Assembly (NCBI GenBank): GCA_946965045.2 | Contig: OX337234.1 | Location: forward strand, 2,790,001-2,854,000 | DNA: 64,000 nucleotides | Direction: 5' to 3' | DNA from: Epithemia pelagica | Lineage: Eukaryota > Protista > Bacillariophyta | In this document: positions 18,725 to 27,520 of the stretch, in pieces | Layout: the number at the start of each line of letters is the position of its first letter | Numbering within the stretch: the stretch's first letter is position 1 | The notes under the pieces: generated by a model | Databases searched by the model: none | What the model saw: the letters and a program-made list of their open reading frames with translations, nothing else | What the model was told of the DNA's origin: nothing | Position numbers and translations under genes: made by a program

Positions 18725-20287
18725 TTAGTCACTCGTGTTCTTTTTCTGGAGGATCATGTACCGATTGGCCGCGGACTTGTCTACAACTGTTTCGTCTTCC
18801 GAAAGCAGCTCAAAGCCTTTACTGGAAAGAAAGTCCAACACCTTGGTGCGATGAGAGGGTGTGGCCGATGCCACTTCTTCAATTAGTACATGTTGTACCT
18901 TGGGCCACCACCAATCTTCAATAAAGTCCATGGCGACTCCAATATCCACCTTGAGGAGATCAATCGTATCCGGAAGATCGGTCTTGGTCATGTGAAAGGC
19001 TTGCAGGAGGGATCCCAAATTCACCGAAACCGGTCGCCAACGCCACAAAAAGGCAACCGCCAGTTCACAAACAGCTTGACGCAATCCTTGTAATGGAAGT
19101 CGTTCAATCATGGAACAGAGACTCGGTCTCGATCCCTTGTAATAGTCCAAAAAGGCCTTGTCAGACTGCAGCAATGGTTTGATGCTGGATTCATACTTGT
19201 AGTGCGGGTGCGTAGTACTGGAGGAGGGGGTTTCTTCAAAGTACGTGAGCTTGGTGGGAGAAGGAGACGAGGATGCCGGACGACTTCTCTTTTTGGCTGG
19301 AGCCAAACCCATCTTGGCTACCTGGATCTTGGTGTTGCGGTGCTTTCTCATGGCTCGAGCGGCATTCCGTTCACAGGCCTCAAAGGTGGTGGGGACCGGT
19401 TCCAAACACAAGATAGTCAAGGGTTCCTTCTTGATCGTTGGCTCACGGGATTCATCCTGATCATCATGCTGCGCAGCCACCCATGCTGCAAAAGCACCGA
19501 TATTGGCCCCAATATCCACGACAAACTTGGCATCCTGAACTATTGATCGTGCTTTGGTGTACATTTCTTCTTGAAAGATTTGTTGAACGATTCTCTTGCC
19601 ATCGTCTTCGGATGTACAGGCAATCGAGGAGCTGTCCAGGTATCCTTTACAGTCGTTTGGAAGACGAAGTTCCAACGACCGTTGGGAAGTTTGACCGTAG
19701 GAAGGCAATGCTGAATTGGAAGTAATCAAAGGACTCCACATCCACCAAATGGTATTCAAACTCAGGGACAATGGTGTCGTTCTTCGTTCCGGTGCCCAAT
19801 ACAAGTGAATGGAACCCATAGTCAAATTCCGAAAGACAGAAAGACCATACAATCTCTGCAAGAGAGAAGGGGTCAGTGTTTGCACCATTTGCAATTCAGT
19901 CGCCTTGGCTTTGGTACCCCCCAAAACAGAGACTTCCACAGGATCGTCTTCGGAATGAAAAGAGTCACGTCTGTTGCTGGTAAGAGAAATAGGATCGTTC
20001 ACATGGTCCATCGTCAAGACCTTGTAGGACGAACTGATGGACTCTTGACTGTCGCATCGCGAAATACGAAATTCTGCCCCACCCGATTTCGCAACAATGC
20101 CAGCAGGACTGGATTCTTCCTCGGCCGAACTATCATCTTCAATCAACAACAAGGACGGTTCACTGCCCTCTCCAGACTCTTCTTCTTCCCCTTTGACTTC
20201 TTTGATGGAATCCGAAGATGCCAATGATAAGCTTGATCCCGTCAGGGAAAAATTTGTTTGCTGGCTTGTCTGATACACGAGCTTCAT
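18725..20287 (-). CDS. FkbM-family SAM-dependent methyltransferase with an acidic Ser-rich N-terminal extension
   Basis: VVDIGANIGAF, LCLEPVPTTFEACERN, IDLLKVDI. First plausible ATG at 20287. Confidence 0.8.
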   Translation of the reverse strand: MKLVYQTSQQTNFSLTGSSLSLASSDSIKEVKGEEEESGEGSEPSLLLIEDDSSAEEESSPAGIVAKSGGAEFRISRCDSQESISSSYKVLTMDHVNDPISLTSNRRDSFHSEDDPVEVSVLGGTKAKATELQMVQTLTPSLLQRLYGLSVFRNLTMGSIHLYWAPERRTTPLSLSLNTIWWMWSPLITSNSALPSYGQTSQRSLELRLPNDCKGYLDSSSIACTSEDDGKRIVQQIFQEEMYTKARSIVQDAKFVVDIGANIGAFAAWVAAQHDDQDESREPTIKKEPLTILCLEPVPTTFEACERNAARAMRKHRNTKIQVAKMGLAPAKKRSRPASSSPSPTKLTYFEETPSSSTTHPHYKYESSIKPLLQSDKAFLDYYKGSRPSLCSMIERLPLQGLRQAVCELAVAFLWRWRPVSVNLGSLLQAFHMTKTDLPDTIDLLKVDIGVAMDFIEDWWWPKVQHVLIEEVASATPSHRTKVLDFLSSKGFELLSEDETVVDKSAANRYMILQKKNTSD

Positions 20288-20585
20288 GGTGCCCTTCTTG
20301 TTTTGTGGATATGGATGTGTGTGTGTATTTGCGTGTGGGGACTCGGACTGCGATGCAAAATTTGTGAAAGCGTTTGGGTGTTTCCTCTCCCTCTTCCACC
20401 TCCCCTCCCTTGGATTCGGTCGCACCCATCGCCCCCACTCTCTATCCTCCGTCTCGTCACTGACGCAGTGCAACTTGTCCGCTCGAATTCGAAGCTCAGA
20501 CACAGAAATAGGTTCTGATTCATTAAGTATAACAGAAGGTTTCTGTCACAACTTCTGTCGTAGAGCAACAATCATTAGATGACAA

Positions 20586-21246
20586 GTGACAAGGCCATTC
20601 CGAATCAGGCCATATGGCGAAGGCGTCTGGAAATGGATACCAAGTTCCGAGTTCGGCGAGCACGAACCACTGACCATGAGGGAATTTCCTAAACAGCGCG
20701 TGTGCTACGGGGACGAAAGACTGAAAGACAAAAATGACTACGGCATCAACAACTTGATTAAACAACGGCATGCTACCGATTGATAGCCATGCAAAACCGG
20801 CAATGGTTCATCATGGTGCCACAAGATTTCTTTCATTCCCATTTCCCATTCAAGATGGTGAGGGAAGCGGTGGACCGCTGGTTGTTGTCTTCCGCAAATC
20901 CTGGGGGAAGTTTTCGCCCCAACATTGGTTCGACCAAAAACTCTTTTCCAACTTCCCCCAGAAACATACGTTCGGGTGCCGGAATTCCTCGCTCCACCAC
21001 CCACCAACGCGAACACTCCACTGCTTCCGATACACCCCATCTGTTGTCGCCTTCTTTTGCAAACGGATGGTCCGTGTGACTTGTGGTGGGTGCGTGTGGA
21101 GAGGTGACGTGTTGTGGGGTGGTGGGGAGGATCACAAGCCATACCACGTTGTCCGAATCGAGCGACAACGCGTGGAGGAACTTCTCCGAATACAATACCT
21201 ATCACTCGTAGAAAGATACGGTTTCGATCCATTTGAATGTTTGTAG
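20586..21246 (+). other. Possible small or degraded coding region of unknown identity
   Basis: Overlapping 65-164 aa ORFs on both strands with no recognisable motif, between the FkbM and fusion genes. Confidence 0.2.
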
Positions 21247-21532
21247 TAACTCAATATCTTTAGAAAGCGCACAACGCCTGATAGTGCGCAAAACGAACTT
21301 GCTTGCGTGGCAAAGGCATATGTCTAGGGTTCGCACGTCACACTTCGCGTTGCCAGCTTTCGATGTCTTGGACCAATGAGAGACGAGTGCGACAAGGTTC
21401 GATTTCTGTTTTTCCGTGACGCACTGCTTCCTTCATGTCGCGCCACCAATGCGGGATCTTTGAGGTCAGTCAGAGAAGGGTACCACAAGCAACATCCTCA
21501 GACAGACAAACCACCCAACAAAAGGAGGAGGT

Positions 21533-23701
21533 ATGCACGCAGTTGCAGCAACAAGCATTCGCACAAATTCAAGTTGGAGAGTCTTTCAAACGCGTCTCCA
21601 CCGATTTTCATCATCATCATTCTCGTCCGCCACTTTTGTATCGAGGCATTTTGCATCAAATCCACTTACACGAACAACAATTACAATGGATCCAACGAAG
21701 ACTCAATCCAGCAACTCCCTGACCTCTTTGGCGGGCCTCAAAGAGAGTGACCGAACAGTGTCCACCGTCTCGGACGATTTTTCCTCCGACAGTGGCAGTG
21801 TGAGCGGCAGTGTGGATGGTCGTGGCTACCACGAAGCCGGCGTCAAGTCTCAGTACGACACCCAAGAGAAGCTTGCCTTTTACAATGAAGTCATGGGGGA
21901 TGGCACGGGAAACATTCACTTTGGAAAGTGGGACGGAGTGGACATGGACGAACCCGGCGCTTATGGAAAGGCTTCGGAACTCATGACGGATCACATGTTT
22001 GAGTTGGCCACCAGTTTGTTGAAGAATCCGACCGATTCGTCGGCGGCGGGATCCCCCAAGAAATTGCGCCTGGTAGATCTTGGCGCTGGTACCGGAAGTG
22101 CGGCCCGACGTTTGGCATCGGCCAACGAGAGCCTCGAATGCACCTGCTTGAACTTGTGCGAACGACAAAATGCCATTAGTTGGGAACAAAATGAAGAAAT
22201 GGGATTGAAGGATCGCGTGCAAGTTCTCACTGGAACCTACGAAAAGGCGCCCTTTGACAACTGCTCTTTTGACATTTTGTTCAGTCAAGATGCCCTCATT
22301 CATTCGTACAGCAAGAAGAATGCTTACATGGAGGCCAAGCGCATTGCTCGTCCTGGTGCAGTCTTTATCTTTTCGGATCTCATGGCTGGAGAGCAAGCTT
22401 CCGCCGAAGAACTCGACAGCTTTGCGTCGACCAACATGGTCAAGGATTGGTTGACACCCTCGCAGAACATTGAATGTTTGAAGGAAGTGGGCTTCCGGCA
22501 AGTCACCTTCATTGACATGACTGAAGATATCAAGATGAGCTTTGTTGGAATGCTCAAGAAGGTGGAAGAACTCCTTTCCAACACACAAGATAGTATTGAT
22601 CAAGCCTTGTTGGAAACTTACAAGAAGAATTTGACCAAGAGAATTGAACAGTGCGACCGCAAAATCTTTAGCTGGGGGATTGTTCATGCCAGAAAACCCA
22701 TCAAGGTTGCGATTTATCCTTCCCTACCGGTAGCCTTTGAACCCAAGGTCCCCGAGTTGTTTGAACAATTCCATGGAGAAGCCGATGAAGAGACAGATAC
22801 CATTGTGGTGGACTTTACAACGCGCGTCAATGAAGAAGTTGTCATGGCGCTCCCCAAGCAAGTGTCCTTGATTGTCACCTTGTCGTCCGGTAAGGATCAC
22901 ATTGCCTGTGATACCGCCGCTTCTCGAGGTATTCAGGTTGCTTCCTCCGACAAGACGTGCATTACAGAATCGGTTGCCGAATACGGATTGTGCATAATTA
23001 TCAATGGCCTCCGAAACATTTTTGGCAACATTGGTGTTCCTTTCCCTGGTAAGGCGTGGACACTCAGCTGGAACTGCCAAGGTCTTAGTATGGACCAGGC
23101 AACCATTGGTATCATTGGTATGGGTGACATTGCATCCTTGATGGTCCGGAAATTGAGAGCCTTGTCCAGTTCGCTTCGAATTCTCTACTACGAACCGGAA
23201 CAATTCCGCAAGAAGGACTTTGAAAAGGAAATGAATTTGGAATACTGTTCGTCGCCCATGGAAGTCGCCAAGGGCGATTTGGATATTCTCATGCCATTGG
23301 CACCCCTCATGCCGGCGACGACCAACATGGTGAATGAAGAAATGTTTAGTGTCTTGCCGGAAAAATGTGGCCTCATTAACATTTCTCGTGGACAAGTCAT
23401 CGTGCAAGATGCCTTGGTCCAGGCTCTCAAGGACAAGAAACTGAAATATGCCATTTTGGATGCCACCACTCCTGAGCCTCTGCCGGAAGATCACGAATTG
23501 AATTCCATGTCCAATGTCTTTATTCTTCCCCACTACGCCACCAACACGTTGGAAGTTCGTCAAAAGTTGGTACGTTCTACTTTCGTGACCGATGCGAGGT
23601 TTGTGTTTTCACCAAGAATGATTCTTTCCCTCACTTGTTTCATTGTTCTGTTTCAGGTTGGTGGAATTGAAGGCATTGCCTACAATCACTATCTGCCGTA
23701 A
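21533..23701 (+). CDS. Fusion of a sarcosine/dimethylglycine-type class I methyltransferase and a D-isomer-specific 2-hydroxyacid dehydrogenase
   Basis: One ORF. Methyltransferase: FYNEVMG...NIHFGKW, VDLGAGTGSAAR, FDILFSQDALIH, PGAVFIFSD. Dehydrogenase: GIIGMGDIA, INISRG, LDATTPEPL, ILPHYAT. Probable in-frame 87-bp intron at 23570-23656; 3' end uncertain; second ATG at 21686. Confidence 0.88.
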   Translation: MHAVAATSIRTNSSWRVFQTRLHRFSSSSFSSATFVSRHFASNPLTRTTITMDPTKTQSSNSLTSLAGLKESDRTVSTVSDDFSSDSGSVSGSVDGRGYHEAGVKSQYDTQEKLAFYNEVMGDGTGNIHFGKWDGVDMDEPGAYGKASELMTDHMFELATSLLKNPTDSSAAGSPKKLRLVDLGAGTGSAARRLASANESLECTCLNLCERQNAISWEQNEEMGLKDRVQVLTGTYEKAPFDNCSFDILFSQDALIHSYSKKNAYMEAKRIARPGAVFIFSDLMAGEQASAEELDSFASTNMVKDWLTPSQNIECLKEVGFRQVTFIDMTEDIKMSFVGMLKKVEELLSNTQDSIDQALLETYKKNLTKRIEQCDRKIFSWGIVHARKPIKVAIYPSLPVAFEPKVPELFEQFHGEADEETDTIVVDFTTRVNEEVVMALPKQVSLIVTLSSGKDHIACDTAASRGIQVASSDKTCITESVAEYGLCIIINGLRNIFGNIGVPFPGKAWTLSWNCQGLSMDQATIGIIGMGDIASLMVRKLRALSSSLRILYYEPEQFRKKDFEKEMNLEYCSSPMEVAKGDLDILMPLAPLMPATTNMVNEEMFSVLPEKCGLINISRGQVIVQDALVQALKDKKLKYAILDATTPEPLPEDHELNSMSNVFILPHYATNTLEVRQKLVRSTFVTDARFVFSPRMILSLTCFIVLFQVGGIEGIAYNHYLP

Positions 23702-25795
23702 ATATAGCAGCGAGTGGGCTGCGTTTCGAATCCTTTTTGGTGCGTTGCGCAGTCGCGCGCATCTGTGGGAGAATTACAGACGAAACACGGCTTTCTTTTG
23801 GGTCGGCATGGTAGTTTATAGTTTGGTTGTATACACATGTGTCGTTGCATCATGGACTAACCGTTTATTCCAGCCAATCCATACTCTCGAGAGTATGGTT
23901 GCAAACGACCGCTGTCAAAGATTGACAACACAGTATTCTTTTTAACTTTATGTAACTCTGGTATCATCAGAAGTCGACAGACCATTATTTATTTGCGGGG
24001 GTTGTGTGAAATGGAACTTGGTCCTGTGGTAGCCTTTGCAATTGTCGTTGTTGGTCAAGAACCGTGTGCGTCAACGTAGAGAATTGGACCGAGTCCCAAC
24101 AACACGACGAAGACAAATTCCTTTAGCAATGGGTTCCATGCTAGGAGTTCAGATCTCCTATATCTATGTCTCTCCTTAGGGAGGGAGTAAGGGAGTTGAT
24201 ATGGAGCAACGACAATCACCATACACTTCACATCTTTGGACAATAATTGGCAATGAAAGCAATAGATGATGATTCGACAAGAAATCAGAAAACTAGAGGG
24301 ACCATTACACGAAAGGAGACCAATTTACGACTTCCTACAACGTTACCTACCATAGATACTTGTCATTTCCAGTCAATAGGAGGAATGAATACGTACGGTT
24401 CATCAGGACATGCAAGATGCCTACCGACCGAGAAAGTCAACCAGGTCCATTCGAGGCAGCCCCTTTTGTGGTTGCGGGACAGTTCTAGGGCCCATAGCAT
24501 AGAATAAAATAATATATTATGCGTCTTGGCGTCATCGAAACCGGCCATTTGGGTTTTTAGATGCCCATGCATGCCCCCATGGTCTTCACGGGACTTTGAA
24601 CTCACTAGGACACACCGTGCACATGATGATGTGTGGCTACAAACCTCAAGGATCCGAAGACGAACACGTAAAGTGAAAACTAGGCGACTCTCGGTAAGGC
24701 AGCATCAATAATCGTTGGTAGGAGCTAGGTTGTCAATGGTTTTCGTGTCGGCGTCTTCGTTCACTATCGTCGTAAATGGCTCCTTCTTGTCCATCGAGTA
24801 TACGCTCTCCGCCCGAAGCCTACAACCACGAAGTGCTATCCGTGATCCATCCGTGATGTCCTGGCACATGTCATTATTGTCATTGGCAATAATTATCGAC
24901 ACGTTGGTATAGTGTAGAGCTCGTGCTTAGCTTGTCGTCTCTCCCGAAAACTTCACAAGAACGAAATTGGTGTGGTAGGTATTCTCTCTCTCTACCTACC
25001 TAGTAGAGCTAGAGGAGTTTAGTTGCTCTACCAAAGAGAGCTACCATCATTCCCCCATGTATCAGCGCCCCAGGCCCAAGGTCCCCACGCCCCCCACCTA
25101 TGACCCTTATTGATTGTGTATTGGGCATCGGTCATTCTACGAGTACAATAAATGTTATTTTTTGTTTGTCCTCACCCAACCAGAAACCAGATGTCCAAAT
25201 CCCCCATCACTATCACCCGAGCGGCCCTCTCAAAAAACTCAAAAAGTGTGTGAACGCAAAAACCAGACACCGTCTGTTCTTCCTGGCTCCGTGCAGTCAA
25301 GAGTGGGAAGGAGGATAGAGACTGTGATGCAATCAGGTTTACGGTACCGTATGGATCTTGTTCCCCTCACTCGGGACGATTTATGCCTGTCCTCCTTCTG
25401 AAACACACTCGGAACACCAATGCTTGAGCTCATGTCCATTCGGAAGGTACATGCAAGACGATGTAAGAAGATCGTCCCCCCAGCCAATACAAAAGACGGG
25501 ACAAGATGAAGTAAGACACACATTGTCACGAATCATGACAAAAGACAAGAAAGCCAATTCTAGGTAGGCTTCGTTGGTGAAAGGTGAATACTACTACTGT
25601 GCAGAAGAGACGCAAATTTTGGCGGCTGTTGTATTGAGCCACAAAACGTTTGTCTCTCACACCGTTTGGCTCGAAAACAAAGAGAATTGCCTGTGGCACT
25701 GTTTCTTCCTTGCAACTACCACTGTTTCTTCCTTGCAACTACCATTTTTCCTCACTGGCAACCTTTGCTAAACAGTGGTAATACTCGCATCAACC

Positions 25796-27520
25796 ATGAC
25801 GACGACAACAACAACAACGACACGGAATAGTACAAGTAGTAGCAATGACCTTCGTCTTGCAAAGCCGGGAGCATCCAGTCAACCAGTCTTTTGGCACTTT
25901 GATGCAGAAGAACAAGATCTTTTCATGAACGCGTCGGACGAAGACGAGGAAGTCGCTGTCTCGGTCGTTCAAAAACGACAACCCGTCCGTGTAAACAACA
26001 AGGAAAAACCGAACAAACCAAAAAGCACCAAACAAAAGCACAGCTCGCGTAAGCGCCAGAACGAGGTATCGAGCGTTCCAAGAAACAGCGATAACAGTAA
26101 GGGCTATCGATCGGCTCCATCCTCTCCACATCGCCCCTTGAGAAGATATCCGAGAGCATCCTCGCTGCTTCAAGGTGTGCAACAAAAGCTGCAGCTCTCA
26201 TCCTTGGACGGCGGCAGTGACTTTCGTAGCAACACCACCACCAACAACAACAACAACCGCGAAGAATTCTTGACCGACACACATTCTCCATCCTCACGAT
26301 CTCCTTCCATCTCTACCGCAGCTACGGCCGCCACAACTTCTACCACTTCCTCCTCCTCGTGTTGTCACCGTGACCATTCCGATAGTCCAAGGAGGAGTCC
26401 ATCCAATCATCCCGATAGTCCAAGGAGGAGTCCATCCAATCCTTTTGCCATTCGAAAGACCATTCAACTCACGGACCAATCCGTTCCAGCTACAACTACC
26501 ACAGGAAATACAAACAGTCTTACCTCACCCACCATGGAGCGGACCCCCCTCGTCCACCAGCATCAAGATTTCATGGTAGAAGCTCCTCCTCTTTCACCCC
26601 TGGCTTGTCCCCATTCATCAGAGACTCCTCGCCATCATTGCGACAGAATCGATCACAATATCCAACAACATTTGCAAGAACTGGAACAATTGATGCAAAC
26701 GCAGCACCGACAACGCCAACGAAAGCAAGAAGCACTGGATGCCATTGTTGCCTACTCCTTGGAACGAGAAGAACAAGCACAACGGTATCGCCGTCAACCA
26801 CCAAGGAATCATCATCGTGTCGATTCTCCACTTGCAAGTCCAGACGTGTTGCAGCAGCCGTCTCCTCCACAACTGTCACACATAGGTAATGCGCAAGCAA
26901 CTCACGAGCAGGAAGCCGAATCCACTCGTCCTTGTTCCCCGCATCCTCCCTCATCTCCTCCCGTCCAGGTTCCAGCTGGTTCACAAGTAGTGACCACCAC
27001 CAAAAAAACCTTGCATCAAGATCCCATTACGGGAGCCACGGTAACTACGACAACCATTACCACCACTACTACCACGACTCCAGATGATTCTATTCGGACA
27101 CGGTCTCGAGTTGCATCCGGCAATGACGTCCTTCAACAGCAGCAGCTCCCTAGCTCTCCCGTGCCAGTGGAACCATCTCCCTCCCTCACCGCTTCTCCTG
27201 CTCCTGCTCCTGCTGCTACAAGAACAACCACTCCCAAACAAATTGAAATCTGTCCTGGTTTTTCCATGCCTCTGAGGGGTGCGGAAGAAACCTTGGACTA
27301 TCTAGGTCAAGGCGATCCCTCTCTGATTGCGTCCACCTTTTGTTTTGCCTGTAACCACAATGTACATGTTTTGGCCGATGCAGCCTTGGGTCTTTGTCCC
27401 ACATGTCGATCGGTGATCCCTCTCGAAGACAATGACAATGGTCATGGGGTTTCCTTGGGATTTTTGGCCCACGAAAGGGACGAATTGCAAGCAGTGGCGA
27501 ATTCCTTGAAGATTCAATAG
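25796..27520 (+). CDS. Low-complexity protein with a C-terminal CxxC...CxxC (zinc-ribbon-like) domain
   Basis: Long S/T/P/Q-rich ORF ending LRGAEET...CFACNHNVHVLADAALGLCPTCRSVIP; internal 33-bp in-frame tandem repeat at 26379-26440. Confidence 0.7.
   Translation: MTTTTTTTTRNSTSSSNDLRLAKPGASSQPVFWHFDAEEQDLFMNASDEDEEVAVSVVQKRQPVRVNNKEKPNKPKSTKQKHSSRKRQNEVSSVPRNSDNSKGYRSAPSSPHRPLRRYPRASSLLQGVQQKLQLSSLDGGSDFRSNTTTNNNNNREEFLTDTHSPSSRSPSISTAATAATTSTTSSSSCCHRDHSDSPRRSPSNHPDSPRRSPSNPFAIRKTIQLTDQSVPATTTTGNTNSLTSPTMERTPLVHQHQDFMVEAPPLSPLACPHSSETPRHHCDRIDHNIQQHLQELEQLMQTQHRQRQRKQEALDAIVAYSLEREEQAQRYRRQPPRNHHRVDSPLASPDVLQQPSPPQLSHIGNAQATHEQEAESTRPCSPHPPSSPPVQVPAGSQVVTTTKKTLHQDPITGATVTTTTITTTTTTTPDDSIRTRSRVASGNDVLQQQQLPSSPVPVEPSPSLTASPAPAPAATRTTTPKQIEICPGFSMPLRGAEETLDYLGQGDPSLIASTFCFACNHNVHVLADAALGLCPTCRSVIPLEDNDNGHGVSLGFLAHERDELQAVANSLKIQ

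What the first reader, a model, noticed from the sequence alone, without database searches (positions are those of the whole stretch)
21533..23701. Methyltransferase fused to a D-2-hydroxyacid dehydrogenase: candidate two-step DMSP/osmolyte synthesis enzyme
Seen: one reading frame joins a sarcosine/dimethylglycine-type SAM methyltransferase (about 21840-22700) to a D-isomer-specific 2-hydroxyacid dehydrogenase. The latter has an intact Rossmann motif and Arg/Glu/His catalytic positions (INISRG, PEPL, LPHY). Known: algal DMSP synthesis by transamination runs Met to MTOB, then MTOB to D-MTHB (reductase), then D-MTHB to DMSHB (S-methyltransferase). Diatom MTHB methyltransferases (TpMMT, DSYE) are class I enzymes related to betaine-type methyltransferases, and to my knowledge the algal MTOB reductase is not firmly identified. 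Inference: the fusion couples reduction of a 2-oxo acid to methylation of its D-hydroxy product, exactly those two steps. Alternative: glycine betaine synthesis coupled to glyoxylate/hydroxypyruvate reduction.
Basis: partly seen in the sequence, partly recalled or inferred. Interest (0 to 1): 0.82.

Follow-up and report, generated by a model that had tools for sequence, protein, structure and literature searches.

The report
Candidate DMSP reductase–methyltransferase fusion gene
A diatom gene joins a methyltransferase, whose closest tested relative makes the precursor of the climate-relevant sulfur compound DMSP, to a 2-oxo-acid reductase. Its relatives sit beside proven DMSP genes in other diatoms, so it is a strong but untested candidate for the missing algal reductase step.

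Summary
One expressed, spliced gene (CDS 21686-23569 + 23657-23701, 642 aa) fuses a SAM methyltransferase (MT) to an intact D-2-hydroxyacid dehydrogenase (HADH).

The window belongs to an Epithemia-like diatom. Both domains are under strong purifying selection.

The MT is not a glycine/sarcosine enzyme. It lies in a 100/100-supported clade with orthologues of TpMMT, the validated diatom MTHB S-methyltransferase.

The gene is the two-domain form of a wide algal family:
- MT-HADH-classII-aldolase in diatoms and Chromera.
- Phe/Leu-dehydrogenase-MT-HADH-aldolase in cryptophytes and diatoms.

These four enzyme classes match the four steps of the DMSP transamination pathway.

In six other diatom genomes or contig sets, family members lie next to TpMMT orthologues or to DSYE, including the tested Nitzschia inconspicua DSYE. 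In Gynuella, dsyGD is followed by a 2-Hacid_dh gene. DsyG/DSYE-like MTs are independently fused to 2-Hacid_dh or PanE-type reductases.

Best reading (about 0.55): a bifunctional MTOB reductase / MTHB S-methyltransferase that makes DMSHB. Nothing has been assayed. The literature notes these larger "TpMMT-like" proteins only as of unknown function.

On another piece of this genome the scan had already noted a DSYE/DsyG-like MT beside a class II aldolase.

The parts
21686..23569 (+). Exon 1 of the fusion gene, from the conserved start codon (MDPTKTQ...) to the splice donor
   Evidence: Same start as P0001, P0330 and E. clementina P0002. RNA contigs cover 21553-23571.
23570..23656 (+). 87-nt phase-0 spliceosomal intron (GTACGT...TTTCAG) that stays in frame in the genomic ORF
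   Evidence: RNA contigs of X2 and X3 skip these 87 nt, GT..AG. One haplotype has a 2-nt deletion at 23628. E. clementina has a 93-nt intron at the same codon.
23657..23701 (+). Exon 2: last 14 codons (VGGIEGIAYNHYLP) plus the stop
   Evidence: Spliced product ends like E. clementina P0002.
21830..22741 (+). SAM-dependent methyltransferase domain of the TpMMT clade. Motifs: VMGDGTGNIHFGKW 21890-21931, VDLGAGTGS 22073-22099, FSQDALIHS 22280-22306.
   Evidence: Pfam. 52-55% identity to TpMMT orthologues. Trees. Motif alignment.
22775..23569 (+). D-isomer-specific 2-hydroxyacid dehydrogenase domain, continued by exon 2. Motifs: GxGxxA 23108-23134, catalytic Arg 23375-23392, Glu 23468-23485, His 23525-23548.
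   Evidence: Pfam 2-Hacid_dh_C 3.7e-34. GRHPR 2gcg E 7e-34 with R/E/H aligned. Conserved across the family.
21533..21685 (+). In-frame upstream extension of 51 Ser/Arg-rich codons from an earlier ATG; probably 5' leader, not shown to be translated
   Evidence: ORF list. RNA contig starts at 21553. Orthologue models start at the M52 equivalent.
20504..21685 (.). Intergenic region of about 1.2 kb between the fusion gene and the divergently oriented FkbM-like gene; possible shared promoter (inference)
   Evidence: Coordinates of the two ORFs.
18728..20503 (-). Divergent neighbour: 592-aa ORF whose C-terminal ~310 aa is an FkbM-family methyltransferase domain; possible pathway partner
   Evidence: 35% identity, E 5e-42, to the N-terminal FkbM domain of P0201, where it is fused to a DsyG/DSYE-like MT followed by ApbA_C. 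Atlas features 0.96 to FkbM clusters. Pfam itself is silent.

Best explanation
The gene encodes a probably cytosolic, 642-aa bifunctional enzyme of the methionine-transamination route to DMSP. Its C-terminal D-2-hydroxyacid dehydrogenase domain reduces 4-methylthio-2-oxobutyrate (MTOB) with NAD(P)H to D-4-methylthio-2-hydroxybutyrate (MTHB). Its N-terminal TpMMT-clade domain then S-methylates MTHB with SAM to give DMSHB. The last step, oxidative decarboxylation to DMSP, is done in relatives by a fused class-II-aldolase-fold domain with an intact 3-His metal site. In this genome that step must be supplied in trans or be absent. Shown here: the domain identities, intact catalytic and cofactor motifs, one spliced transcript, purifying selection, clade membership, the family's architectures, and the gene neighbourhoods. 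Inferred: the substrates, the order of the steps and the product.
For: (1) The MT domain sits in a 100/100-supported clade (stem length 1.97) with TpMMT orthologues and all fusion MT domains. DsyG, DSYE and the Porphyra DsyG-like protein fall outside it (quick tree). It is 52-55% identical to TpMMT orthologues, against 30% to DsyG and 25% to DSYE. The reference proteins were identified by reproducing published identities: DsyG vs TpMMT 31%, vs the Porphyra protein 38.6%, C. closterium 0.71. (2) TpMMT is bracketed by fusion proteins in the tree, so an MT-HADH fusion is probably the ancestral state. (3) The HADH domain has the intact Arg/Glu/His and GxGxxA motifs, conserved in every family member. 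A D-specific enzyme fits the D-MTHB intermediate reported for algae (established knowledge, recalled from memory). (4) Domain fusions in relatives: cryptophyte proteins add a Phe/Leu-dehydrogenase domain (PDB 1c1d E 2e-21, GGxK and GxGxxG intact), which converts an amino acid to a 2-oxo acid. They and diatom proteins add a class II aldolase domain (HxH...H intact; it hits NovR 9ryg and TqaM 9m09). CloR, NovR and TqaM oxidatively decarboxylate 2-hydroxy acids with O2 (PMC13111500, PMC12006828), which is the chemistry of DMSHB to DMSP. (5) Linkage: TpMMT orthologues lie head-to-head with the 3-domain gene in Thalassiosira sp., a Bacillariaceae MAG, Skeletonema marinoi and Cyclotella cryptica. 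The tested N. inconspicua DSYE lies head-to-head with the 4-domain gene. The closest non-Epithemia 2-domain relative (P0168) lies tail-to-tail with a DSYE gene in three independent marine assemblies. (6) In Gynuella the gene after dsyGD is a 2-Hacid_dh, 31% identical to this domain, and it shares the unusual PH(I/Y)ATNT motif. (7) There are independent fusions of DSYE-like or DsyG-like MTs to 2-Hacid_dh_C (P0232, P0256) and to unrelated PanE/ApbA 2-oxo-acid reductases (P0186, P0198, P0244). (8) The gene is functional: spliced RNA, and dN about 0.09-0.10 with saturated dS against E. clementina in both domains.
Against: No enzyme assay exists for any member. Similar predictions have failed before: the Gynuella 2-Hacid_dh showed no MTOB reductase activity as purified, and the Porphyra DsyG-like/decarboxylase fusion had no MSM or DDC activity. 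Identity to TpMMT orthologues is only 52-55%, below the field's 70% cut-off. Relatives have a separate proven MSM next door, so the fused MT may be redundant or do something else. In 4-domain diatom proteins the MT lacks the GDG..NIHFGKW motif. In this window and in E. clementina no TpMMT, DSYE or aldolase gene lies within about 10 kb. The neighbour here is an FkbM-type MT, which the canonical pathway does not need. Cofactor preference could not be read from the sequence. Whether this diatom makes DMSP is unknown to me.
Confidence: 0.55

Rival explanations
1. Same chemistry, different substrate. The enzyme reduces another 2-oxo acid (for example phenylpyruvate, indolepyruvate, 2-oxoisocaproate or hydroxypyruvate) and methylates that hydroxy acid or a downstream product. 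It would then make a still unnamed methylated metabolite rather than DMSHB.
For: The N-terminal domain of the 4-domain relatives is closest to Phe/Leu dehydrogenases, whose usual substrates are aromatic or branched amino acids. The MT is only 52-55% identical to TpMMT orthologues. An FkbM-type MT is linked or fused to the MT and reductase modules, which suggests more methylation than DMSP needs. Only one TpMMT has ever been assayed.
Against: The only characterised member of the clade is an MTHB S-methyltransferase. Relatives are linked to two different proven MSM families, TpMMT and DSYE. The bacterial dsyGD operon carries the same reductase class.
Confidence: 0.25
2. Only the dehydrogenase half works in DMSP synthesis, as MTOB reductase. 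The fused MT-like domain would be a SAM-sensing or scaffolding domain, or would catalyse a different methylation, while a stand-alone MSM (DSYB, DSYE or TpMMT type) makes DMSHB.
For: Relatives always have a separate MSM beside them. The MT of 4-domain diatom proteins has lost a family-wide motif, and their amino-acid-dehydrogenase-like domain has lost GxGxxG, so pseudo-domains do occur in the family. Earlier notes report DSYB-like and DSYE/DsyG-like genes elsewhere in this genome (untested leads).
Against: In the window's protein all SAM-binding and family motifs are intact. The MT domain is under purifying selection as strong as that on the HADH domain (dN 0.096).
Confidence: 0.1
3. One reading: glycine-betaine synthesis (GSMT/SDMT-type N-methylation) coupled to glyoxylate or hydroxypyruvate reduction.
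For: The best NCBIfam MT model is sarcosine/dimethylglycine MT, and the best dehydrogenase models are glyoxylate reductases. The best PDB hits are Galdieria SDMT 2o57 and human GRHPR.
Against: Scores are far below the equivalog cut-offs: 102-105 against 550, and 125 against 455. Proven S-methyltransferases score the same or higher on the SDMT model: DSYE 140, DsyG 157. SDMT 2o57 gives 64 bits, against about 330-360 for TpMMT orthologues. The MT lies in the TpMMT clade.
Confidence: 0.04
4. A decaying remnant: a truncated copy of the 3-domain gene that lost its aldolase domain and no longer has a role.
For: It lacks the aldolase domain and the MSM neighbour that relatives have.
Against: The ORF and all catalytic motifs are intact. 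It is transcribed and spliced. dN/dS is far below 1 against E. clementina, with a conserved intron position. The same 2-domain form is kept in a distant marine diatom, P0168.
Confidence: 0.03

Closest known systems
TpMMT, the MTHB S-methyltransferase of Thalassiosira pseudonana (Kageyama et al. 2018, as cited in PMC11306096 and PMC10989797)
   Same: Same MT clade (100/100). 52-55% identity to its orthologues, with shared motifs GDGT.NIHFGKW, DLG.GTG, FSQDA.(I/V)H and F.WG..H.(R/K)KP.
   Different: TpMMT has a single domain of about 310 aa. Here the MT is fused to a dehydrogenase. Identity is below the 70% used in the field to call TpMMT. Activity is untested.
[quoted passage not shown]
   Same: Same multidomain family. 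The cluster of 3-domain protein P0159 contains T. oceanica EJK59075, the aldolase part adjacent by accession number to EJK59074.
   Different: Those carry an additional class II aldolase domain; the window's gene stops after the dehydrogenase.
DsyGD and the adjacent predicted MTOB reductase of Gynuella sunshinyii (PMC11306096)
   Same: Same set of activities in one locus. DsyG is a homologous MT (30% identity). The downstream gene is a 2-Hacid_dh, 31% identical to this HADH domain, with the shared PH.ATNT motif.
   Different: In the bacterium the MT is fused to a cupin-type decarboxylase (PF04115) and the reductase is separate. Here the MT is fused to the reductase and no decarboxylase is present. 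The Gynuella reductase was inactive when tested.
DSYE (algal MTHB S-methyltransferase, PMC11306096)
   Same: Same broad SDMT-like MT superfamily. DSYE genes lie next to members of this fusion family in N. inconspicua and in an uncultured marine diatom.
   Different: Only 25% identity and outside the clade. DSYE is described as single-domain, although a DSYE-like MT fused to 2-Hacid_dh_C exists (P0232).
Human glyoxylate/hydroxypyruvate reductase GRHPR (PDB 2gcg, 2h1s)
   Same: Best solved relative of the dehydrogenase domain (E 7e-34), with the same catalytic Arg/Glu/His.
   Different: GRHPR has PHIGSAT where this family has PH(Y/F)ATNT, and GxGxxG where this family has GxGxxA. The domain is far below the glyoxylate-reductase equivalog cut-offs.
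Galdieria sarcosine/dimethylglycine N-methyltransferase (PDB 2o57)
   Same: Best solved relative of the MT domain, with the same class I fold and SAM motifs.
   Different: Weak match (64 bits, E 1.6e-16). It is an N-methyltransferase of betaine synthesis. The window's MT is much closer to S-methyltransferases of DMSP synthesis.

Membership tests
D-isomer-specific 2-hydroxyacid dehydrogenases (Pfam 2-Hacid_dh / 2-Hacid_dh_C) | Both Pfam domains above the gathering score | tested here: met
   118.1 bits against 25.1, and 42.6 against 24.6
D-isomer-specific 2-hydroxyacid dehydrogenases (Pfam 2-Hacid_dh / 2-Hacid_dh_C) | Catalytic Arg-Glu-His and a glycine-rich dinucleotide-binding motif | tested here: met
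   INISRG, PEPLP and LPH align with GRHPR R245/E274/H293. GIIGMGDIA is a GxGxxA variant. All are conserved in the family.
Glyoxylate/hydroxypyruvate reductase (NCBIfam equivalogs PRK13243, GhrB) | Score above the curated equivalog cut-off | tested here: not met
   124.6 against 455, and 91.1 against 492
Glycine/sarcosine/dimethylglycine N-methyltransferases (GSMT/SDMT) | Score above the NCBIfam NF041675 cut-off | tested here: not met
   102-105 bits against 550. Proven S-methyltransferases DSYE and DsyG score 140 and 157 on the same model.
TpMMT-type MTHB S-methyltransferases | Falls in the clade that holds TpMMT orthologues, apart from DsyG, DSYE and SDMT-like proteins | tested here: met
   100/100 clade of 35 rows in the careful ML tree, also in the quick tree. 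T. pseudonana's own sequence was not retrieved; orthologues were identified from published identity values.
TpMMT-type MTHB S-methyltransferases | At least 70% identity to TpMMT and a single-domain architecture (the criterion of PMC10989797) | tested here: not met
   52-55% identity to orthologues and two domains
TpMMT-type MTHB S-methyltransferases | SAM-dependent S-methylation of D-MTHB to DMSHB | not testable with these tools
   Needs an enzyme assay. The SAM-binding and clade motifs are intact.
DSYE | Clade membership and DSYE signature motifs (SCEVLCHA, DFTDRNAT, FAWGIF) | tested here: not met
   25% identity, motifs absent, outside the clade
DsyGD | DsyG-clade MT fused to a DsyD (PF04115) decarboxylase domain | tested here: not met
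   No PF04115. 30% identity to DsyG and outside its clade.
Algal MT-HADH(-aldolase) multidomain family (unnamed; the 'TpMMT-like larger proteins') | Colinear homology across both the MT and HADH domains | tested here: met
   41-80% identity over both domains to P0002-P0005 and P0168
Algal MT-HADH(-aldolase) multidomain family (unnamed; the 'TpMMT-like larger proteins') | C-terminal class II aldolase domain, N-terminal amino-acid-dehydrogenase-like domain | tested here: not met
   Neither is found anywhere in the 64-kb window by tblastn. The stop follows the HADH domain, as in E. clementina.

The most novel reading that the evidence does not exclude
The family to which this gene belongs would hold the long-missing algal enzymes of the DMSP transamination pathway. 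The fused D-2-hydroxyacid dehydrogenase would be the MTOB reductase. The class-II-aldolase-fold 3-His domain of the longer relatives would be a CloR/NovR-like O2-dependent DMSHB decarboxylase. The Phe/Leu-dehydrogenase domain of cryptophyte members would replace the aminotransferase. One polypeptide could then carry the whole route from methionine to DMSP. In diatoms the family would form a conserved two-gene DMSP cluster with TpMMT or DSYE. The window's gene would be the minimal MTOB-to-DMSHB module, perhaps working with its FkbM-type neighbour.
Probability: 0.45. Interest if true: 0.9.

Novelty: new variant of a known kind. Interest (0 to 1): 0.75.

Why it matters
DMSP is made in amounts of billions of tonnes a year and is the main source of dimethyl sulfide. 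Only the S-methyltransferase step is known in algae. According to the 2024 DSYE paper, the MTOB reductase and (outside DsyGD) the decarboxylase have no assigned genes.

This gene and its relatives give concrete candidates that can be assayed directly for those steps. They also give an explanation for the origin of TpMMT as an offshoot of a fusion protein. If confirmed, they add new marker genes for predicting DMSP producers from omics data.

The conserved pairing with TpMMT or DSYE would also be a rare example of a metabolic gene cluster in diatoms.

Tried and rejected
- Merged gene model: rejected. The ORF is continuous, an RNA contig bridges the domain boundary, and more than 60 homologues, including complete transcripts, have the same order.
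- Bacterial contaminant: rejected. The gene has a spliceosomal intron and its relatives are diatom genes.
- Aldolase, amino-acid-dehydrogenase, TpMMT-like or DSYE-like genes elsewhere in the window or beside the E. clementina orthologue: none found.
- T. pseudonana TpMMT by name: it did not appear in the word searches. Orthologues were identified from published identities instead.
- dN/dS: dS is saturated, so only 'much below 1' can be said.
- Cofactor preference (NADH or NADPH): inconclusive from the motif after strand 2.
- Pfam on the neighbouring ORFs: no hits. One call failed because of a wrong frame.
- Co-expression data in the Skeletonema salinity paper: nothing is held.
- The search of earlier findings by sequence and by pathway words: blank.
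- Literature searches for MTOB reductase, for a DMSHB decarboxylase of the class II aldolase type, and for 2-hydroxyacid dehydrogenase with DMSP and diatom: no paper assigns these functions.
- Not done: structure prediction, because it could not settle substrate specificity.
Full report
**Observation.** The window is eukaryotic DNA of about 48-50% G+C. The ORF 21533..23701 (+) of 722 codons exists. It carries class I SAM-methyltransferase Pfam domains at aa 176-291 and both halves of a D-isomer-specific 2-hydroxyacid dehydrogenase at aa 419-681 (2-Hacid_dh_C 3.7e-34). NCBIfam's best models are sarcosine/dimethylglycine MT (102 bits, cut-off 550) and glyoxylate reductase (125 bits, cut-off 455), so neither half is an equivalog of a named enzyme. 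The best solved relative of the MT half is Galdieria SDMT 2o57, but only at E 1.6e-16.

**Gene model and expression.**
- 23570-23656 is an 87-nt GTACGT...TTTCAG intron in phase 0. This is why the genomic ORF reads through it.
- Metatranscriptome contigs of a closely related strain (90-99% alike) skip exactly these 87 nt. They cover 21553-23909 in pieces, and one contig (22681-23045) crosses the MT/HADH boundary.
- One haplotype of the source organism has a 2-nt deletion inside the intron. That deletion gives the unspliced ORF call P0001 a different tail.
- Unspliced ORF calls from the same species (P0001, P0330) and the NCBI model of Epithemia clementina (P0002, 80% identical) all start at the equivalent of M52 (21686). 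P0002 ends with the same spliced tail.
- The product is therefore 642 aa, with a Ser-rich 48-aa N-terminus and no obvious signal peptide (my reading of the sequence).
- Against E. clementina, dN is 0.096 (MT) and 0.093 (HADH) while dS is saturated. The intron sits at the same codon. Both halves are under strong constraint.

**The methyltransferase half.** Searched alone, it finds about 310-aa single-domain diatom proteins at 50-57% identity. These are TpMMT orthologues:
- Thalassiosira sp. P0027 is 73% identical to the only such protein of Cylindrotheca closterium (P0087). The DSYE paper lists one TpMMT copy at 0.71 identity in that species.
- The exhaustive profile search returned a 494-aa MT+PF04115 protein that is 100% identical to a Gynuella DsyGD (P0187), a 458-aa MT+Asp_decarbox protein matching the Porphyra DsyGD-like protein (P0184), and a 305-aa protein 98-100% identical to the N. 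inconspicua DSYE gene (P0268).
- The pairwise identities among these proteins reproduce the published figures.

A careful ML tree of 45 MT domains gives a 100/100 clade with a stem length of 1.97. It holds the TpMMT orthologues and every fusion MT domain. Within it the window, E. clementina and P0168 form a 100/99 two-domain clade. That clade is sister (91/80) to TpMMT orthologues plus the 3-domain diatom proteins. DsyG, the Porphyra-like proteins and DSYE lie outside (quick tree). All SAM-binding and clade-specific motifs are intact.

**The family.** Whole-length searches show that the gene is the short form of a widespread algal family:
- MT-HADH-classII-aldolase, about 860-910 aa: Skeletonema marinoi, Thalassiosira sp., Cyclotella cryptica, Cylindrotheca, a Bacillariaceae MAG, Gedaniella, and Chromera velia (839 aa).
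- A four-domain form, about 1130-1250 aa: Chroomonas CCMP1168 and Baffinella (cryptophytes), Nitzschia inconspicua and many uncultured diatoms.
- MT-aldolase in Chromera.
- MT-HADH alone: the window, Epithemia, P0168 and P0173.

The extra N-terminal domain of the cryptophyte proteins is a Phe/Leu-dehydrogenase homologue (PDB 1c1d, E 2e-21) with the GGxK lysine and GxGxxG motifs. In diatoms it is degenerate. The aldolase domain keeps the HxH...H metal site. Besides adducin and 3ocr, it hits TqaM (9m09) and NovR (9ryg). CloR and NovR are 3-His iron oxygenases that convert a 2-hydroxy acid to the acid one carbon shorter with O2, and TqaM is described as NovR/CloR-like. Amino-acid deamination, 2-oxo-acid reduction to the D-hydroxy acid, methylation and oxidative decarboxylation are the four steps of the transamination route to DMSP, as drawn in the DSYE paper.

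The cluster of 3-domain protein P0159 includes T. oceanica EJK59075. Its accession number is adjacent to EJK59074, one of the larger 'TpMMT-like' proteins that Li et al. set aside as of unknown function.

**Linkage.**
- The TpMMT orthologue and the 3-domain gene are divergent neighbours, 0.4-1.0 kb apart, in Thalassiosira sp. (L001), a Bacillariaceae MAG (L002), S. marinoi (L008) and C. cryptica (L009).
- In N. inconspicua, the DSYE gene that was cloned and tested in the DSYE paper lies head-to-head, 1.5 kb away, with the 4-domain gene. A second copy of the fusion lies 8 kb downstream.
- The closest non-Epithemia relative of the window's gene (P0168; MT 53%, HADH 57%) lies tail-to-tail with a DSYE gene (77% to P0268) in three independent marine assemblies.
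- DSYE is not a close paralogue of the fused MT, so that pairing cannot be a simple tandem duplication.
- In Gynuella the ORF that follows dsyGD has both 2-Hacid_dh domains, is 31% identical to the window's HADH, and shares PH(I/Y)ATNT where GRHPR has PHIGSAT. This is the 'predicted MTOB reductase' of the DSYE paper.
- DSYE-like or DsyG-like MTs are also fused to 2-Hacid_dh_C (P0232, 50% to DSYE; P0256) and to the unrelated ApbA/PanE 2-oxo-acid reductase fold (P0186, P0198, P0244).

Methyltransferases of this superfamily have therefore joined 2-oxo-acid reductases several times.

**The window's own neighbourhood.** No TpMMT, DSYE, aldolase or amino-acid-dehydrogenase homologue lies in the 64 kb, nor within 10 kb of the E. 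clementina orthologue. The divergent upstream ORF (18728-20503, minus strand) ends in an FkbM-type MT domain. That domain is 35% identical (E 5e-42) to the N-terminal domain of P0201. P0201 is one continuous ORF joining FkbM, a DsyG/DSYE-like MT (47% to P0186) and, after a frame break, ApbA_C. The same three modules therefore occur as one polypeptide elsewhere. The pairing is not seen next to the E. clementina gene, so I treat it as a lead.

Earlier notes of this scan report, on other pieces of this genome, a DSYE/DsyG-like MT beside a class II aldolase and a DSYB fusion. I could not read those sequences and use them only as leads.

**Mechanism.** Most likely (about 0.55), the HADH domain reduces MTOB to D-MTHB and the MT domain methylates it to DMSHB. 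Decarboxylation would be supplied in trans. The rivals are:
- another 2-oxo-acid substrate (0.25);
- a working reductase with a non-MSM MT domain (0.10);
- betaine and glyoxylate metabolism (0.04);
- a relic (0.03).

Precedents against over-confidence: the Gynuella reductase and the Porphyra fusion were inactive in vitro, and only one TpMMT has been assayed.

**Novelty.** Within the searchable library, no paper assigns an MTOB reductase or an aldolase-fold decarboxylase in algae, or describes the gene pairing. The larger proteins are mentioned once, as of unknown function. Subscription journals are not covered.

Noticed in passing
window 18728-20503 (-): The divergent neighbour encodes a 592-aa protein with a disordered Ser/Glu-rich N-half and an FkbM-type methyltransferase C-half. 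Its homologue is fused to a DsyG/DSYE-like MT plus ApbA_C in metagenomic protein P0201 (locus L011). The neighbour is absent beside the E. clementina orthologue.
   Followed up: partly
L007 10001-13660 and 21432-23660 (Nitzschia inconspicua); P0112, P0121: In 4-domain diatom proteins the N-terminal amino-acid-dehydrogenase-like domain has lost GxGxxG and the MT domain lacks the GDG..NIHFGKW motif. These may be pseudo-domains that rely on the adjacent DSYE. N. inconspicua carries two copies of the fusion about 8 kb apart.
   Followed up: partly
window 23628: There is a 2-nt deletion polymorphism at about half depth inside the intron. It explains why the two haplotype ORF calls (P0001, P0330) end differently.
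   Followed up: yes
window 21533-21685: An upstream in-frame ATG adds 51 Ser/Arg-rich residues that resemble an organellar presequence. RNA contigs begin at 21553. Whether the extension is ever translated is open.
   Followed up: partly
L001 5400-7498 and L008 6387-8132: A UPF0020 (PF01170) gene lies next to the TpMMT orthologue in both Thalassiosira sp. and Skeletonema marinoi. The synteny block in Thalassiosirales is therefore larger than the gene pair.
   Followed up: no
window 25775-27520 (+): A 581-aa ORF that is Thr/Ser/Pro/Gln-rich, with a Cys-rich C-terminus (CFAC...CPTC) and no Pfam match.
   Followed up: no
P0170 / P0322 (Chromera velia Cvel_6440): Chromera has both an MT-HADH-aldolase protein (P0004) and an MT-aldolase protein without the dehydrogenase. 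The modules are therefore reshuffled within one organism.
   Followed up: no
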